From Hormiphora californensis (Eukaryota; Animalia; Ctenophora): DNA of 64,000 nt. The notes below the pieces were generated by a model. That model saw only the letters and a list, made by a program, of their open reading frames with translations. It was not told where the DNA came from and did no database searches. Each line of letters begins with the position of its first letter. Positions within the stretch are counted from its first letter, which is position 1. Positions 35,191 through 41,819 of the stretch are shown here, one piece after another. Made by a program: the position numbers and the translations under genes. The stretch covers positions 5,332,001 to 5,396,000 of the forward strand of contig CM035350.1 of the NCBI GenBank assembly GCA_020137815.1, read 5' to 3'.

Positions 35191-35955
35191 TCTGTATGCG
35201 GATTTTGTAGCTATGACTTGGTTGGAGGACAAAATTGCAAGTTCTACAGTGTTGATACTGGCTGAGAAACACTGTAGTGATGTCGATGCTGTCAAGGAAT
35301 TCTGCTTGAAAGCAGGTGATCAGAAAGTAGATACATATTCCGATTTTTTACCCGGATGCCATCCAGATTTGCAAAATAGGGTTCGCAATACGGATAAGTC
35401 TGTAGCATGACGCTTCAAATCTCCCAGGATTTACAGAGAGCGAGATTGTATTCGAGTTGGTGGAACCAGTATGATTTGATTTTTTGATTTGAAAAGATAT
35501 CATATAAACGTACAAATTGCACATTAAATAAATACCCGACTGACTCTTACTAATAGTTTAGCAGCCTAAGGCGCGAGTGCTTACGTCTTAATAAACTCAT
35601 TTAAAAATATTTTAAAAAAGTAGCTATAAGGCTAAAACACACTCTTATACTAGTTGTAAGCTAAATTTATTTCACTCATTAATAATAACAATTATACTTA
35701 ATACTTACCCTTGATTCCCAATCCCCTACCTCCCTCCCCCATGAACCATACCCCGAATTTAACGTCATGTCGACTGTTGGGTAGATGTTAAGATCAGTTA
35801 TAATTCACATCTGTGGTGCGGGTCCACCATCTTGTTTCAAACTGTTCAACACCACTCCAAACCTTCAATTTGAGTACAATGTAAGCTATGTGCGGAAGAA
35901 GGACAGTTACTGTAAAGATAAAAGTAGAGAAAGGGGCCCACACCACAGCAGCGAA

Positions 35956-38900
35956 TTAAGTTATGTCGTGTAAGGCTTTCCAGAGATGGTCTTTCAGTCT
36001 AGAGGAAAATAAATGGTGTTCAGCTGTATTTCTCAGTTCTTTAGGAAGTAAGTTCCACTCAAGGTGGCAGCGATAAAAGTAACAGTTTTTGAACAGGTCT
36101 ACTCTGGGTTGTTCGGTACATATAATGTCCGTACTGTCTCGTTTTGTTTGTTGTCTGGTGGCACGTCTGTCATGTAATTCCGGATTGTATTTTTGTAGGA
36201 AAGATGGGAGTTTTATAGGAGACGTCTCATAGAATATTTTATGGAACAATTTAAGATCATTATATTGAAATTTTTGAGTCATTGGGAGTACGTCAATCTC
36301 CCTGAGTTTCTTTATATACGTATCTAAACTATAACTGGTATCTGTTTCACCGAATATCCATTTTGTGGCACGTTTCTGGAGTCGTTCAAACTTAAGCAGA
36401 CTTGACTCACTTTGTGGACGCCATATTTGGCTACAGTGTTCGAACAAAGATCTAACTAGACTAATGTAGAGGTTCTTCTTTTTAAGGGGACATTTAACTA
36501 ATACGCCTACACGCTTCACCAGTCCTAATCTTTGAGAAGCTTTGGAAACAACATTTTTCTGGTGTTCGATTGGCGACAACTTGTGATTAGTTGAGACTCC
36601 TAGATCAACTTCATTTTCACATAATTTGATTTCATCTCTGCCTAGGTGATAATTTAATTGACGTTGTTTAATAATTTTAGTACACCTAAGCAGCTTACAC
36701 TTTTTAGGATGGAATATCATTTTATTATCCTTTGCCCATTCCACTAAACTATCGATGTCGGGCTGCAAACTATCTTCTTCACTATTTATAACCCGCCAAA
36801 TTTTCAGATCATCTGCATATAGCCTAATTTTAGTTAGATCATCTTCTCTTAAAACATTAACAATATCATTTATGAATAACACAAACAAGAAAGGGCCTAG
36901 TATTGATCCTTGTGGAACTCCACTCCTAACCTCTACCCATTCTGAAAAATCCCCATCTAACACAACCCTCTGTTGCCTACCAGATAAATAATTCATTAGG
37001 AAACGCAACATCTTACCTCCTAAATTAAACTCATTTTTCAGCTTATTTATTATTACATCATGAGATACACTATCAAATGCTTTCTGAAAGTCAAAGTAAA
37101 CTATATCAGTTTGATTTCGGTTATTTATGTTCAACGCTAATTCACAATTAAACTCAATCAGTTGTGACGTACATGATTTCAAGGGTACAAAACCATGCTG
37201 GTAGGGAGTTATTTTTTCTAGACAGGCTTTATACAGGCGTTCTCTTACTAATTTCTCAAAAACTTTCATAACAAGGCAAGTCAGGGATATAGGCCTATAA
37301 TTCTCAACGCATGATCGTTCCCCTTTCTTGTAAACTGGGACAACGTTCGCGGTTTTCCATTCTGTTGGTATACATCCCTCTGAGTATGATTTATTAAATA
37401 TAAGGGTGAGTGGATAAGCTAGGGATTTATGACATTTCTTAAGTACAACACCGTCAATATTATCTGGACCTGTTGCTTTTGACGCATCCAACTTTTTTAG
37501 AATCTTTAGAATCTCATCAAATCTAAATATCTCAGAGTTAAAATCATTAGTGTGATCTCTATCAATATCAACAGTTTCTTTGTAGGTGCTAGATTCAGTG
37601 AATTGATTACAGAAAAATTCATTGAACATTTCACATTTACGACGACTCGAAGAGCTAAATTTATTATTAAAGTATACTCTCTCAGGAATTCTAGTGCTAT
37701 TCGTTTTGGACTTTACGTGTTTGAAAAATTTCTTTGATACATTAGCATTTGGTGTAAGTTCATCTATAGAGGAAAGCTCGAGAAAGGATGTTTCTTTCTC
37801 TATTGCTAGTGTTCTGTATTGATGTTCTTTGAGTTCGTATTCCTCTTTAGCAACAATACTATCTATATTTTTCAAGAAGGCTTTTCTAGAGTTATCGAAC
37901 GATTTCTTAAGTTGGCGTAGTTCTTCATCATACCAAGGTGGCTGTGATCCAATTTTTACATTGACTAATGGTACATTATGACGTAGTGCAATGTCTAACC
38001 TAGACTTAAAGACTTGTAGGGACTGCTCTGCTGATCAGCAGAGCAGTCCCTACAAGTCTTTAAGTCTAGGTTAGACATTGCACTACGTCATAATGTACCA
38101 TTAGTCAATGTCTGTCGACAGATCCTTGAACTGTCCTAACCAGTCAATTCCTAAAAGCTCTTCATTTAGAGAGTCCCAATCAGCTTTTCTATAGGAGAAT
38201 TTCTTACAATTTTTATACTTAGGGCGTGATTTTTTGAAATTTATCTCACATTTTAGTGTAAGATGGTCCGACTTTACAAGACTATTCTCTTCGAGCAAAA
38301 CATTAGAATAAGTAGTTTCTATGTTAGTAAGTATTAAGTCGAGAATATTTCCATCCCTATGCGTTGGTACATTAACTAGAGATTTTAGGCCTAGAGATAA
38401 AAATAAATTGATAAAACTCTCATGAGTACTATTATTTGACACTGGGACGTCCCAGTTATCCACCGAACTTAGGTTTAGATCCCCTATAATAGTGAGATTC
38501 TTAAACTTCTTGGCAAGATTAGTATAGTAACGTTCCGCCTCTTTGAAGTGTTCCGATCCAGAATAATCATATCTATAAAATGTCGAGATACAAATGGGTG
38601 CTATATTTTTATGCTTTAGAAGAATAGTAACTATTGGTAAATCGGTCTTCGTTTTAACTAACTCTGTCTCAACTCCAATATTGTTTTTACATAGTATTAA
38701 AACTCCTCCACCTCCTTTTTTACTAAAAGTTTTCATATCCTTCTCAGTGCGGTCTTTTCTAAATATAGAGTAATATTTATCTGATATAAGTTCCCCTTCA
38801 CTAATATATTTATTCAGCCAAGTTTCATTTAAAACAACGATATCGGGCGAGTAGGTGAATAAGTATGCTTTTAGATCCCTAAGTTTAGAGGCCTGAAATT

Positions 38901-39453
38901 CAGGCTGATCCCCACCTATTGTGTGCATCTTTATCAGACCGTTAACATTACAATACACTAAGTTCAACTTTTTATCAGGCCCTGGATTAATGATGTCAGG
39001 ATGGCTTCTCAGTAGTAGCATTTTCGCTAACGACATAACAAACATAACAAGTATAGTATATCTGCATCTGACTTTGAACAAATTAATGCCTGCAATCCTA
39101 AACTTTTTATAACATCGATATGCATACTTACTATATCTCATACCTTTGACTAAGAAGAGGAATAGGACACAATTAGCATACCAAATATATGATGAGTTTA
39201 GATCAAAAGACACAAGTTGGCCTTCTTTTCTGAACTTGACGGGTGGAGGGGTACTCCTGAGCATTATTCCTAAAAGAGCTATCATTAGAATTGTGTAACA
39301 AATATATATGAGGAAATGATAGATTAGTATGTCTGTCGTTTCATTGTATTGTCTTTTGTTATTGTCGGTGTTGTCAATTTTTATCCTTTTCCCCCCAGCC
39401 AGACCCCCCGCAAAACCCCCAATAGCTTTTCTGTATTGTTCGACACTGATCAT
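35956..39453 (-). pseudogene. LINE ORF2 (hydrophobic leader + APE endonuclease + RT), disrupted by an inverted duplication at 37958-38111
   Basis: APE: YCNVNGL, LNETWL, GGGVL, GDLNL, ILDLIL, SDH. RT: YRPISL, FDFQKAFD, SGVPQGSILGP, YADD; CR1-like C-terminus YFYR...WNLLP. The frame resumes as SAEQSLQVFK...PPWYDEE below the palindrome centre. Confidence 0.93.
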
Positions 39454-39581
39454 TGAATGGGAATGGGTTTAGGGTTCAGGAATGGGTTAACAAATGGGGA
39501 AATTGGGGGACAATGATGAAAACTCGGCCCCCAAACCCCAGAGAATTGTTATCATTAAATTTCATATTATAAATCAAGATA

Positions 39582-41042
39582 TCAGTTAAAAACTAACTCC
39601 TCATACATAATCTCATTTAACACATTGTACCCATTACTGTTGAGGTGTACTCCGTCCTCCGAAAATAAAACACTATTAAAATTAAGTTCATTATTTAAAA
39701 ACTCAATTGTCCAATCCGAAACTACACAATTCAAAGACCTTCCTACACTCATCACAATACGATTGAACATGAACACGTTACTCGCTATCCAACCACTATC
39801 AGGTCTGAGAGGGATAACCGTAGCGAGAACGATCTCGGTATCCTCCCCAAACCTTCTCTTAACCTCCCTAACTAAATCTACATATGCCTTATACACACTC
39901 CCTTTTCCCTTACTCGACCTTACAAACCCTCCCCAATATCTGATGTCATTGGTCCCAAACGCCAAAATAACCTTATTAACCTCTAGACATGGGTGCGTTA
40001 CTTCCAGTCCTTTCAACATATCCATAGCCAAACTCCCCCTCCAGTTCTCATTCGGCCTACAAAGTCTCGCCCCTGAAATCGAGATGTTCACTAGCGCCGG
40101 GTCCTCGTGGATCCACTTCGTCATACTGGTTCCTAGTAGAAGTGTCCTTGGTGTCAGTCTGGGGTTCGGCAGTGTTGGTGTTGGTAGAAGGGGCGATCTG
40201 GTAGGGAGTACAGAGTTCTCTTCCTGATACCCATCTACGGCAGGCGGCGAGGTTGGCGACAAAGTCATCTGTGATGCTGGAGCTTCCACCCGAGACGGGT
40301 GTACTGCGAACTGGGGCACCTTCTGGGACTTAGCTGGGGTTGGTGCAGGTGGAGTTGGTTCTGGAGGCGATGTTTTGTGCCTCTTCCTAAAAGACAGGGC
40401 ATATCTCACGCCATGCTCAACCTTTTGCGCACGGTGCTTAAAGTGCTCTTGGCACCCTGGCTTCATGGTGTACGCCTCACCATCCTTAGTGGTTATAGAC
40501 AGCTTAGGCCGCATCCTGCCATCTCCAAGGTAGGGAATGAAATCTACAGCACCGTCGTTGCCGACGGTCACGACGGTGATGGGTGAGTTGTCCACCAGCG
40601 AAGTCTCGAAATCTGAGTGGTATCCCACGCCGTCCCCTTTTCTGTATCTAGTGACTAGGCAGGAGTTAAACTCAGTCCCTTGTTCCTTGTTAATCCTCCC
40701 CATCAGGTTATCGATGTTCGGGTATTTAGCTATGTCCTTGGGTGCCAGGTCCACATTGGCCCACCCGTAGGGACACCCAGTGTTAGTTAGCCAGGTATTC
40801 TTGCCAGTTAATCCTCCTACTTCCCATTTCATCATCTCGAGGTCCTCATCAGAAACATATCTCCCGTGGTGGGTAACAAACTGATTCGGATCCTTTTCTG
40901 GTACTCCATCTCTCTTACGCCTCTCTAGCTCCTTTTGTACAATCTGTATAATCCTCTCCAACACGGGCGATGATACCCTGGTAAAGACTTCCTCTAGAGG
41001 TGTGTTGTCTAGAATCATGTTGGAGGCGTTGTTAACAACCAT
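39582..41042 (-). CDS. LINE ORF1: short coiled coil + AlkB-family 2OG-Fe(II) dioxygenase + Pro-rich linker + SGNH/GDSL esterase (486 aa)
   Basis: FNSCLVTRY (N126/Y133), H142-S-D144, H203, R213-YALSF-R219; esterase blocks LLGTS306, G324, GTN365D, D463GVH466. Confidence 0.9.
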   Translation of the reverse strand: MVVNNASNMILDNTPLEEVFTRVSSPVLERIIQIVQKELERRKRDGVPEKDPNQFVTHHGRYVSDEDLEMMKWEVGGLTGKNTWLTNTGCPYGWANVDLAPKDIAKYPNIDNLMGRINKEQGTEFNSCLVTRYRKGDGVGYHSDFETSLVDNSPITVVTVGNDGAVDFIPYLGDGRMRPKLSITTKDGEAYTMKPGCQEHFKHRAQKVEHGVRYALSFRKRHKTSPPEPTPPAPTPAKSQKVPQFAVHPSRVEAPASQMTLSPTSPPAVDGYQEENSVLPTRSPLLPTPTLPNPRLTPRTLLLGTSMTKWIHEDPALVNISISGARLCRPNENWRGSLAMDMLKGLEVTHPCLEVNKVILAFGTNDIRYWGGFVRSSKGKGSVYKAYVDLVREVKRRFGEDTEIVLATVIPLRPDSGWIASNVFMFNRIVMSVGRSLNCVVSDWTIEFLNNELNFNSVLFSEDGVHLNSNGYNVLNEIMYEELVFN

Positions 41043-41819
41043 TCCTAAAACTCCATGGCTAAAACAGGCTGTTAATCCAAGAACATTGCGTCCTCAAATT
41101 AATTTGTTTAAAGTAGTGCCGAAAAGCCCAAACGCTGGAGGAAGCCCAAACGCTGGAGGAAGCCCAAACGCTGGCCAAAATCAAGGCATGTCCGATTGTC
41201 TGGGTTCGAGAAAACGTAAGTATAGTGGACATGTTTTGTAGACTACTTGATCATTGATTTCTACAAAAAATAGGCTACAAAATCTCAAAACACATGTTTG
41301 AAAAAATTCAAATTCACACCCTATTTTTGCAAAACATAATCTTTTCCCTTAAATAGCTGGTGGGTGATATTGACGCAGTGAGGCAGTCCTGGTTTGAGGG
41401 TACCCTACCTAAGGCCAAGTATGATATGATTCTTGCTGCAGCTGCTAAGGATATGGTAGCACATACCTCCCAGTCCAATACTCTGGTCGTGTTTTCTAAG
41501 ACACCTTGTCCACCCTGCACAGAGGTCAAGGTGAGCACTGAGAAGATGGGAAATATATAATATGGAACTTTGTAGACAGCTGCCAATAGAATTGGTTGCA
41601 CTGTCAGACCTCGTATCGCTGACCGGTCAACCCCCCCCAGATAATGTTTGAGGATGCGGGTTTCACCAAGGAGCAGACCAATATAATTACGATCAGTGGA
41701 TGGCCCTCGATGGACGCCATCCAGGAACACTGCAGAGAGCTCACTGGAGAGAGGTGGGCCCCCAGAGTGTGGATAAACGGAAAGGTATCACATAGTAGTT
41801 TCCCAAACATTACAATAAC

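What the first reader, a model, noticed from the sequence alone, without database searches (positions are those of the whole stretch)
39582..41042. LINE retrotransposon ORF1 fuses an AlkB-type dioxygenase to an SGNH esterase
Seen: an intact 486-aa ORF in the ORF1 position of a CR1-group LINE. The element's two ends are fixed by the host exon it splits, so the ORF moved with it. Residues ~55-220 have the full AlkB signature (N126-SCLVTR-Y133; Fe ligands H142-x-D144 and H203; 2OG-binding R213 and R219). After a Pro-rich linker comes an SGNH esterase with S306, G324, N365 and D463xxH466. No RRM or CCHC knuckle is visible. Established: esterase ORF1s occur in CR1/RTEX-type LINEs, and AlkB domains in plant RNA-virus replicases oxidatively demethylate RNA. 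AlkB is not a standard LINE ORF1 module as far as I know, but I cannot search to confirm novelty. Inference: the element may carry its own demethylase in the RNP, removing RT-blocking m1A/m3C or host m6A marks from its RNA (or methyl marks from new cDNA). That would be a retrotransposon-encoded repair or anti-silencing system convergent with RNA viruses.
Basis: partly seen in the sequence, partly recalled or inferred. Interest (0 to 1): 0.95.

Follow-up and report, generated by a model that had tools for sequence, protein, structure and literature searches.

The report
LINE ORF1 with AlkB dioxygenase plus esterase
A jumping gene (LINE) in a comb-jelly genome makes a first protein that joins an AlkB-type nucleic-acid demethylase to the lipid esterase already known from such elements, and this design is conserved in many LINE lineages of ctenophores but appears in no paper I could search.

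Summary
Window 39582-41042 (-) is an intact 486-aa ORF1 with Pfam 2OG-FeII_Oxy_2 (AlkB) and GDSL/SGNH domains. The AlphaFold model matches ALKBH2 and ALKBH3. The esterase half is homologous to the solved ZfL2-1 LINE ORF1p esterase.

It is not a one-off capture. The genome (110.7 Mb, 45 contigs; it fits Hormiphora californensis) holds six full ORF1 copies at 97-100% identity. It also holds at least seven further lineages, down to about 30% identity, with the same AlkB-linker-SGNH order; five of them have an ORF2 or a PHD-finger ORF downstream within the DNA I held. Public data hold more than 100 clusters of such proteins, and every one with a named source is a ctenophore (Pleurobrachia, Mnemiopsis).

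Fe ligands H142, D144 and H203 and 2OG arginines R213 and R219 are invariant in 94 sequences. Non-synonymous change is far below synonymous change.

The ends are fixed by copy comparison and an empty-site contig, not by a demonstrated exon.

New point: the element begins with the host's trans-spliced leader.

The demethylase mechanism is inferred, not shown. I found no LINE precedent; the nearest are an orchid Ty3/Gypsy ALKBH5-like ORF and RNA-virus AlkB domains. Other first readers of this scan noted the same ORF1 type at four other places in this genome.

The parts
35471..41128 (-). Whole LINE copy (about 5.66 kb): SL-derived leader, 5'UTR, ORF1, spacer, ORF2 (broken here), 3'UTR, hexamer-repeat tail
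   Evidence: blastn against five sibling copies gives common ends at 35467-35485 and 41127-41129. An empty-site contig joins 35471 to 41154.
41093..41128 (-). 5' terminal leader derived from the host trans-spliced leader (last 34 nt of the 44-nt SL, with A-to-G variants, preceded by GG)
   Evidence: Matches the SL published for Hormiphora californensis (PMC8527503). Depth is 200-2500 and it is joined to many different sequences in RNA-type runs. It is 100% shared by families that are otherwise about 44% identical. Copies are truncated at different points inside the SL.
41043..41092 (-). 50-nt 5'UTR between the leader and the ORF1 ATG; contains a 3-codon upstream ORF
   Evidence: Read directly from the sequence.
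39582..41042 (-). ORF1, 486 aa plus stop
40908..40997 (-). N-terminal helices (aa 16-45) with a basic RRKR patch; possible oligomerisation or basic motif
   Evidence: AlphaFold helices 16-22 and 25-45. L28, R30, E38 and R42 are invariant in the 11-sequence alignment.
40377..40880 (-). AlkB-type Fe(II)/2OG dioxygenase domain (aa 55-222)
   Evidence: Pfam PF13532. pLDDT about 90-98. Foldseek ALKBH2 E 1e-12, TM 0.69-0.74, rmsd 2.4-3.3 A. Family profile against PDB: ALKBH2 5e-20, ALKBH3 1.5e-19, E. coli AlkB 4.5e-6. H142, D144, H203, R213 and R219 invariant in 94 sequences.
40155..40376 (-). Pro-rich disordered linker (aa 223-296)
   Evidence: pLDDT below 50 for aa 237-293. Highest non-synonymous divergence between families A and B, pN 0.385.
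39585..40154 (-). SGNH/GDSL esterase domain (aa 297-486)
   Evidence: Pfam PF13472. Family profile hits PDB 4c1b 'ORF1-encoded protein' (ZfL2-1 esterase) at E 2.3e-15 and sialate O-acetylesterases at about 1e-16. G324 invariant; S306, G363, T364, N365 and H466 at 90% or more.
39454..39581 (-). 128-nt spacer between ORF1 and ORF2
38101..39453 (-). ORF2, first part: hydrophobic leader ending in a 2A-like ...DIINPGP, then the APE endonuclease; cut short in this copy
   Evidence: Pfam PF03372 at aa 169-397; translation.
37958..38111 (.). Perfect 77+77-nt palindrome. One arm is an inverted duplication found only in this copy; it breaks ORF2.
   Evidence: the repeat finder; sibling copies are contiguous across this point.
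35956..37875 (-). ORF2, second part: reverse transcriptase (YADD present) and C-terminal region
   Evidence: Pfam PF00078, E 6e-31.
35471..35955 (-). 3'UTR ending in (AAATCA)n hexamer repeats, no poly(A)
   Evidence: The 3' ends of seven copies differ only in the number of AAATCA units.

Best explanation
This is ORF1 of a recently active CR1-like LINE family of a ctenophore, most likely Hormiphora californensis.

The protein has four parts: a short basic helical N-terminus, an ALKBH2/3-like Fe(II)/2-oxoglutarate dioxygenase, a disordered Pro-rich linker, and the SGNH esterase typical of 'type IV' LINE ORF1 proteins.

Shown: the architecture, the fold, the complete and conserved active sites of both domains, its spread through many LINE lineages of ctenophores, and purifying selection on it.

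Inferred: ORF1p joins the element's own RNP. There the AlkB domain binds single-stranded nucleic acid and oxidatively removes base methyl groups of the 1-meA/3-meC class from the LINE RNA template, and perhaps from the nascent cDNA or nicked target DNA. Such lesions stall reverse transcriptase. The same domain would also supply the nucleic-acid-binding module that esterase-type ORF1 proteins otherwise lack. The esterase would act as in ZfL2-1, in lipid or membrane association.
For: - Domains and residues.
- Fold: AlphaFold mean pLDDT 85, about 90-98 across most of both domains. Top Foldseek hits are ALKBH2 then ALKBH3, about 190 aligned residues at TM about 0.7.
- Family profile against PDB: ALKBH2/3 about 1e-19 to 5e-20, against E. 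coli AlkB 4.5e-6. ALKBH5 and FTO appear only as weaker fold matches.
- The stretch 'MKPGCQEHFKHRA' aligns with ALKBH3 'MEGATQADWQHRV'.
- Conservation: H142, D144, H203, R213 and R219 are invariant across 94 proteins of 22-89% identity.
- Selection between families: AlkB pN 0.21-0.38 against pS 0.72-0.92, the same constraint as on the esterase, while the linker evolves faster. Within family A, pairs of copies with 35 nucleotide differences show only 13-14 amino-acid differences, none at a catalytic residue.
- Linkage to LINEs: six full ORF1 copies, and families B-E with ORF1 followed by an ORF2 of about 1117-1138 aa or its start. A Mnemiopsis gene model reads AlkB-AlkB-GDSL-APE-RT.
- Breadth: 664 representatives at E<=1e-3. 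Of 96 scanned, 85 carry AlkB and 54 carry GDSL_2. Every named source is a ctenophore.
- Not a recent host capture: the host's ALKBH2-like gene is only 21% identical to the family profile.
[quoted passage not shown] A retrotransposon-encoded AlkB with demethylase activity exists in orchids (PMC9289625).
- Transcription: short contigs 99-100% identical to ORF1 occur in marine RNA-type libraries, one of them oligo-dT.
Against: - No biochemical data exist; substrate and even activity are inferred from conservation.
- The position of the 2OG-contacting Asn of AlkB/ALKBH2 is T131 here and varies across the family.
- Sequence identity to any characterised AlkB is only about 20%, so specificity cannot be transferred with confidence.
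- Viral AlkB domains match the model about as well as ALKBH2/3, so origin and specificity remain open.
- The RNA evidence is contigs from environmental libraries that may contain DNA.
Confidence: 0.6

Rival explanations
1. The AlkB domain is an m6A 'eraser' that strips host-written m6A from the element's RNA to escape epitranscriptomic silencing or decay, as proposed for the orchid Ty3/Gypsy ALKBH5-like ORF.
For: There is precedent for a functional m6A demethylase in a retrotransposon (PMC9289625). m6A affects L1 activity in mammals (PMC7873242, listed). The AlkB fold matches ALKBH5 and FTO at Foldseek E about 1e-9.
Against: The nearest relatives by profile and by fold are ALKBH2/3 (1-meA/3-meC repair). 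ALKBH5 and FTO are absent from the sequence-profile hits and are weaker fold matches, with rmsd 5.7-9.5 A.
Confidence: 0.12
2. The enzyme acts on DNA rather than RNA. It would clean alkylated bases at the nicked target or on the new cDNA, or remove a host DNA methyl mark such as N6-methyladenine from new insertions.
For: ALKBH2, a duplex-DNA repair enzyme, is the best structural match. Target-primed reverse transcription exposes single-stranded DNA.
Against: ALKBH3, which acts on ssDNA and RNA, scores equally. ORF1 proteins are generally RNA-associated (established knowledge). Nothing here speaks to chromatin marks.
Confidence: 0.12
3. The AlkB domain serves mainly as a nucleic-acid-binding scaffold replacing the RRM or CCHC of other ORF1 proteins, and catalysis is irrelevant.
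For: Esterase-type ORF1 proteins lack an RNA-binding domain (PMC3905857). AlkB proteins bind single-stranded nucleic acid.
Against: The three metal ligands and both 2OG arginines are invariant across 94 sequences down to 22% identity. That is not expected if only binding mattered.
Confidence: 0.08
4. The dioxygenase acts on a non-nucleic-acid substrate, such as a protein side chain or a lipid, together with the esterase.
For: The two enzymes are always fused. 2OG oxygenases are chemically versatile, and ALKBH family members have reported protein substrates (established knowledge).
Against: Every closest match is a nucleic-acid demethylase.
Confidence: 0.05
5. Incidental capture of a host AlkB exon, or an assembly chimera confined to this copy.
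For: None found.
Against: Six near-identical copies and at least seven diverged lineages in this genome carry the fusion, and so do other ctenophore species. The host ALKBH2-like gene is only 21% identical.
Confidence: 0.01

Closest known systems
Type IV (esterase) ORF1p of CR1/L2-group LINEs, e.g. zebrafish ZfL2-1 (PDB 4c1b; PMC3905857; Kapitonov & Jurka 2003 as cited in PMC4120745)
   Same: An SGNH esterase at the C-terminus of ORF1, upstream of an APE-RT ORF2. No RRM or CCHC. An N-terminal helical segment. The family profile hits 4c1b at E 2.3e-15. A sister lineage here has PHD fingers in the next ORF.
   Different: A complete AlkB dioxygenase domain and a Pro-rich linker lie between the N-terminal helix and the esterase. 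The host phylum is Ctenophora; PMC4120745 found esterase ORF1s of the Jockey superfamily only in vertebrates, and PMC3905857 lists chordates, cnidarians and sponges.
ALKBH5-like ORF of orchid Ty3/Gypsy (Ogre/Tat) elements (PMC9289625)
   Same: A retrotransposon that encodes its own AlkB-family dioxygenase. Activity on RNA was shown there.
   Different: That is an LTR element in plants, with a separate extra ORF, from the ALKBH5 (m6A) clade, recently acquired in one genus. Here it is a LINE ORF1 fusion, ALKBH2/3-like, old and diversified across a phylum.
AlkB domains in replicase polyproteins of plant RNA viruses (Flexiviridae, Closteroviridae) and some invertebrate picorna-like viruses
   Same: An AlkB domain carried by an RNA-templated replicator. 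The fold matches at Foldseek E 1e-12 to 1e-14. Removal of 1-meA and 3-meC from viral RNA has been reported (my own knowledge, not checked here).
   Different: In the viruses the domain is embedded in an RdRp polyprotein, not fused to an esterase, and identity is only 14-23%. No specific relationship is shown.
Cellular ALKBH2 and ALKBH3
   Same: Best fold and profile matches. HxD...H and RxxxxxR are conserved. An ALKBH3-like 'Q..(W/F).HR' strand is present.
   Different: About 20% identity. The 2OG-contacting Asn is replaced by T131. The domain is fused into a transposon protein. The host's own ALKBH2-like gene is a separate 228-aa single-exon ORF.

Membership tests
AlkB / ALKBH Fe(II)-2OG dioxygenases (Pfam PF13532) | Double-stranded beta-helix fold superposable on AlkB homologues | tested here: met
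   AlphaFold domain pLDDT about 90-98. Foldseek ALKBH2 TM 0.69-0.74, rmsd 2.4-3.3 A over about 190 residues.
AlkB / ALKBH Fe(II)-2OG dioxygenases (Pfam PF13532) | HxD...H iron-binding triad | tested here: met
   H142, D144 and H203 are present and invariant in 94 sequences.
AlkB / ALKBH Fe(II)-2OG dioxygenases (Pfam PF13532) | RxxxxxR 2OG-binding arginines and the conserved Tyr | tested here: met
   R213 and R219 are invariant. Y133 aligns with the ALKBH2 Tyr in 'linrY'.
AlkB / ALKBH Fe(II)-2OG dioxygenases (Pfam PF13532) | Asn two residues before that Tyr (2OG contact in AlkB and ALKBH2) | tested here: not met
   The position is T131 ('lvtrY' against 'linrY') and is variable in the family consensus. 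Thr may substitute; the effect is unknown.
AlkB / ALKBH Fe(II)-2OG dioxygenases (Pfam PF13532) | Oxidative demethylase activity on nucleic acid | not testable with these tools
   Needs an enzyme assay.
SGNH/GDSL hydrolases | Blocks I (GxS), II (G), III (GxND) and V (DxxH) in order | tested here: met
   G304-T-S306, G324, G363-T-N365-D, D463-G-V-H466. G324 invariant; S306, N365 and H466 at 90% or more. Pfam PF13472.
LINE type IV esterase ORF1p (ZfL2-1-like) | Esterase homologous to the LINE esterase, encoded directly upstream of an APE-RT ORF2 | tested here: met
   4c1b hit at E 2.3e-15. ORF order in the window and in nine other loci.
LINE type IV esterase ORF1p (ZfL2-1-like) | N-terminal coiled-coil dimerisation domain | tested here: inconclusive
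   Only a predicted helix at aa 25-45 with conserved L28, R30, E38 and R42. The oligomeric state is unknown.
CR1-group LINEs | ORF2 with an N-terminal APE endonuclease and an RT | tested here: met
   PF03372 and PF00078. Sibling copies have an uninterrupted ORF2 of 1136-1138 aa.
CR1-group LINEs | 3' end of short tandem repeats rather than poly(A) | tested here: met
   (AAATCA)n with n varying between copies.
CR1-group LINEs | RT groups with the CR1/L2/Rex1 reference clades in a phylogeny | not tested
   No reference RT sequences were available in the tools, and the homologues of ORF2 carried no clade names.
ALKBH5/FTO-type m6A erasers (as in the orchid Gypsy ORF) | Closest relatives are ALKBH5 or FTO | tested here: not met
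   ALKBH2/3 rank first by profile and fold. ALKBH5 and FTO appear only as weaker fold hits.

The most novel reading that the evidence does not exclude
Ctenophore LINEs form a phylum-wide lineage of retrotransposons that carry their own RNA- or ssDNA-repair demethylase in the RNP. The same elements ride on host spliced-leader trans-splicing: their RNA carries the SL, the relic SL ends in AG and so could serve again as an acceptor, which would give promoter-independent expression. In this reading the AlkB domain clears RT-blocking methylated bases, possibly including modified cap-proximal SL nucleotides, so that full-length cDNA reaching into the SL can be made. The A-to-G differences between the genomic LINE leaders and the canonical SL would then be footprints of reading modified or edited adenines.
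Probability: 0.25. Interest if true: 0.88.

Novelty: new variant of a known kind. Interest (0 to 1): 0.72.

Why it matters
LINE ORF1 proteins are classed by a small set of modules: RRM, CCHC, coiled coil, PHD and esterase. How esterase-type ORF1 proteins engage RNA is an open question that the ZfL2-1 structural paper itself raises.

An old, diversified and selectively maintained AlkB module in LINE ORF1 adds an enzymatic nucleic-acid-modifying activity to that list. It would be the first such case in non-LTR elements that I could find.

It parallels AlkB domains in RNA viruses and the orchid Gypsy ALKBH5-like ORF. That makes the idea that base methylation limits reverse transcription or survival of retroelement RNA directly testable in an early-branching animal.

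The spliced-leader head of the same elements offers a route to ask how LINEs are expressed in genomes with pervasive trans-splicing. It may also explain some of the 718 dispersed 'leader' loci reported for Hormiphora.

Tried and rejected
I could not read the contigs that encode the external homologues.
- The single metagenome scan with the ORF1 alignment returned only bacterial SGNH genes, picked up through the DG[VI]HLN pattern. The first attempt, with the 94-sequence alignment, had no stretch conserved enough to search with.
Downstream ORFs of the most divergent lineages, and the dispersed canonical SL loci, could not be read.
- The search for homologous proteins with the AlkB domain alone found one fragment. 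With ORF2 it gave thousands of unnamed APE-RT proteins and no clade names.
- The listing of cluster members gave names only for Pleurobrachia and Mnemiopsis.
- A Pfam scan of the 150-sequence alignment exceeded the size limit and was repeated on 96 sequences.
- The host-exon claim: no long frame crosses the joined flanks, so it is not confirmed.
- I looked for esterase-only ORF1 copies among the weaker genome hits. Those I could read (L021, L023, L024, L028, L030) are 5'-truncated or chimeric copies of the same families.
- Rejected readings: chimeric assembly or one-off capture; recent derivation from the host ALKBH2-like gene (21% identity); ALKBH5/FTO affinity.
Full report
**1. The observation**

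The ORF listing shows an ATG-initiated, stop-free ORF of 486 aa at 39582-41042 on the minus strand. On the same strand it is followed by a 450-aa ORF (38101-39453) and a 639-aa ORF (35956-37875).

Pfam assigns ORF1 two domains, both above the curated cut-offs:
- PF13532 2OG-FeII_Oxy_2 at aa 78-211, E 1.4e-12.
- PF13472 Lipase_GDSL_2 at aa 318-473, E 1.1e-9.

The next two ORFs are Exo_endo_phos and RVT_1. No RRM or zinc knuckle is found.

A plain sequence search of PDB already finds ALKBH3 and ALKBH2 at E about 1e-3.

**2. The element and this copy**

blastn of 33-44 kb of the window against five sibling loci fixes the common ends at 35467-35485 and 41127-41129.

The layout on the minus strand is:
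- a 36-nt leader (41093-41128);
- a 50-nt 5'UTR;
- ORF1;
- a 128-nt spacer;
- ORF2;
- about 485 nt of 3'UTR;
- an (AAATCA)n tail whose repeat number differs between copies, with no poly(A).

The window copy is defective. A perfect 77+77-nt palindrome (37958-38034 / 38035-38111) is absent from the siblings, which run straight through that point. It splits ORF2 into the two ORFs seen. Sibling copies elsewhere have ORF1 of 486 aa and an uninterrupted ORF2 of 1136-1138 aa. Whether the palindrome is real or an assembly artefact I cannot tell.

No open frame longer than 82 aa crosses the joined flanks. However, one contig in a seawater RNA-type library joins 35471 to 41154, with four other letters and without the element. 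That looks like an empty-site allele.

Together with 0.1-2.6% divergence among six full ORF1 copies, this points to recent activity.

**3. Not a one-off**

A six-frame search of the window's own assembly (110.7 Mb, 45 contigs) with ORF1 gives 57 matches:
- six full-length copies at 97-100% identity;
- a family at 66% (B);
- families at 43-45% (C, D, E);
- weaker ones at about 32%.

I read the loci. Families B, C and D have intact AlkB-linker-SGNH ORF1s of 469-523 aa followed by ORF2s of 1117-1138 aa. Family E is the same, with the ORF2 start visible.

Three more divergent lineages also carry AlkB, a long Pro-rich linker and a weaker SGNH match: L056/L059 at 527-580 aa, and L064 at 599 aa. In L056 and L059 the next ORF begins with PHD fingers, a module known from CR1-like elements (PMC4120745).

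A Pfam PF13532 search of the genome gives 35 matches. Most lie in such ORF1s and a few in host genes, including a 228-aa single-exon ALKBH2-like ORF. That host protein is only 21% identical to the LINE-AlkB profile (hhalign probability 98.4%). The domain is therefore not a recent capture of it.

**4. Beyond this genome**

- The search for homologous proteins returns 15 proteins, 13 of which are flagged with both domains.
- An exhaustive HMMER search of 1.84 billion representatives with the AlkB domain alone gives 664 hits at E<=1e-3 and 116 at E<=1e-10. Most of the best 150 are 450-600 aa long, with the AlkB part near residues 80-235.
- Of 96 scanned, 85 carry PF13532 and 54 carry PF13472.
- Some have two AlkB domains in tandem.
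- A 1443-aa Mnemiopsis-cluster member reads AlkB-AlkB-GDSL-APE-RT.
- The only named sources are Pleurobrachia bachei and Mnemiopsis leidyi.
- ESM-Atlas clusters with this architecture list Ctenophora as the only known phylum.

The genome's size, contig number and spliced leader fit Hormiphora californensis (PMC8527503).

**5. Is the AlkB domain a working enzyme?**

Conservation. In a 94-sequence alignment (22-89% identity to the query) H142, D144, H203, R213, R219, M193 and G324 are invariant. At 90% or more are Y92, N118, L129, E146, C197, Q198, S217, F218, S306, G363, T364, N365 and H466.

Selection between families. Synonymous sites are saturated (pS 0.72-0.92). The AlkB domain has pN 0.21-0.38, equal to the esterase domain. 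Between families A and B the linker is clearly faster (pN 0.385). Within family A, pairs of copies with 35 nucleotide differences show only 13-14 amino-acid differences, none at a catalytic residue.

Structure. AlphaFold with this alignment gives mean pLDDT 85 and about 90-98 across most of both domains, with a disordered linker at 237-293. Foldseek ranks ALKBH2 first (E 1e-12, TM 0.69-0.74, rmsd 2.4-3.3 A), then ALKBH3. ALKBH6, ALKBH8, AlkB, ALKBH5 and FTO follow. The second domain matches sialate O-acetylesterases.

Profile. The family profile against PDB sequences gives:

| Target | E-value |
|---|---|
| ALKBH2 | 5e-20 |
| ALKBH3 | 1.5e-19 |
| E. coli AlkB | 4.5e-6 |
| ZfL2-1 ORF1p esterase (4c1b) | 2.3e-15 |

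One caveat: the 2OG-contacting Asn of AlkB and ALKBH2 is T131 here.

Viral AlkB domains (plant closterovirus and flexivirus replicases, picorna-like polyproteins, giant viruses) match the model about as well, at 14-23% identity. The source of the domain is therefore open.

**6. Mechanism**

Shown: the architecture, the fold, intact active sites, selection, and linkage to LINEs.

Inferred: ORF1p joins the element's RNP. The AlkB domain binds single-stranded nucleic acid and removes 1-meA/3-meC-type methyl lesions that block reverse transcriptase. The ALKBH2/3 affinity favours this over an m6A-eraser role.

The AlkB domain may also fill the gap noted for ZfL2-1 ORF1p, which has an active esterase and binds lipids but has no apparent RNA-binding domain (PMC3905857).

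The rivals (m6A erasure, DNA-level action, binding only, another substrate) are scored in the Rival explanations section.

**7. What is known**

The ORF1 typologies list RRM, CCHC, coiled coil, PHD and esterase, and no dioxygenase (PMC4120745 and the papers it cites).

Six full-text searches that bore on the question found no LINE with an AlkB domain and no paper linking AlkB to ctenophore elements.

The closest precedent is a functional ALKBH5-like ORF in orchid Ty3/Gypsy elements (PMC9289625). Repbase and Dfam could not be searched.

The proteins themselves already sit in public databases. A few carry an automatic name ('alkylated DNA repair dioxygenase AlkB') and most have none.

I therefore rate this a new variant of a known kind.

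**8. The spliced leader, noticed on the way**

The first 34 nt after 'GG' at the element's 5' end are the 3' part of the 44-nt trans-spliced leader published for H. californensis.

- In four runs this piece has depth 200-2500 and continues into many different sequences.
- It is the only stretch shared at 100% by families that are otherwise about 44% identical in ORF1.
- Copies begin at different points inside the SL, up to almost its first base, and unrelated flank follows immediately upstream.
- Families A, B, C and E carry A-to-G variants (CAAAC to CAGGC or CAAGC; TCAAC to TCGGC, TCAGC or TCGAC). The divergent L057, L063 and L064 lineages carry the canonical SL.
- The G-variant occurs at only 20 places in the genome; at least 17 of them coincide with LINE copies found. 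The canonical 33-mer occurs at 494 places.

So the template RNAs carried an SL. Whether it is re-acquired by trans-splicing at each cycle or inherited is open. I found no paper describing SL-headed autonomous LINEs in animals. SL relics on dinoflagellate retrogenes are known (listed).

**9. Limits**

- There was no reference RT set for clade assignment.
- The RNA evidence is environmental contigs only.
- Four other first-reader notes record the same ORF1 type elsewhere in this genome.

Noticed in passing
window 41093-41128 (-); also L002-L025, L057, L063, L064: Full-length copies of all these LINE families begin with the host trans-spliced leader, truncated at varying points inside it. Families A, B, C and E carry A-to-G variants of the SL that are seen almost only at LINE 5' ends. 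Other lineages carry the canonical SL. The relic SL ends in AG and could act again as a trans-splice acceptor.
   Followed up: partly
window 37958-38111: A perfect 77+77-nt palindrome with no spacer, unique to this copy. It is an inverted duplication that frameshifts ORF2. It could be a real rearrangement or a long-read assembly artefact.
   Followed up: partly
L036 (G000:C5:8601000-8610999) compared with window 35483-41124: Family B shares ORF2 and the 3'UTR with family A at 94-98% nucleotide identity, but its ORF1 is only 66% identical in protein. Only the first about 250 nt of that region align, at 77%. This indicates a recent swap of the ORF1 module between lineages.
   Followed up: partly
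window 35471 / 41154 flanks: A 290-nt contig from a seawater RNA-type library joins the two flanks without the element, with four other letters between them. It is a likely empty-site allele, so the insertion is polymorphic. The 5' flank has an 18-nt tandem repeat (about 41129-41180) and a GGGCTT microhomology with the element's first bases.
   Followed up: partly
window 38977-39453 (-), ORF2 N-terminus: ORF2 starts with a hydrophobic leader of about 160 aa ending in ...HPDIINPGP. This is a 2A-like motif also kept in families C and E (QPSIVNPGP, QPNILNPGP). 2A-like sequences in APE-type LINEs are published (PMC3708506, listed).
   Followed up: no
P0030, P0033, P0104, P0163, P0171 (external proteins): Some ctenophore ORF1 proteins carry two AlkB domains in tandem ahead of the esterase. 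P0033 has two AlkB domains and no detected esterase.
   Followed up: partly
L056:3-473 (-), L059:1-534 (-): In a divergent AlkB-SGNH lineage the ORF after ORF1 opens with one or two PHD fingers, the other module classically linked to CR1-like elements.
   Followed up: partly
L055:1486-2169 (-) (G000:C5:6329263-6329670): The host's own ALKBH2-like protein is a 228-aa intron-less ORF. It is 21% identical to the LINE AlkB profile.
   Followed up: partly
L023:1498-3855 (-): A 5'-truncated family-C ORF1 is fused in frame to the open frame of an unrelated element, giving a 786-aa chimeric open frame.
   Followed up: no
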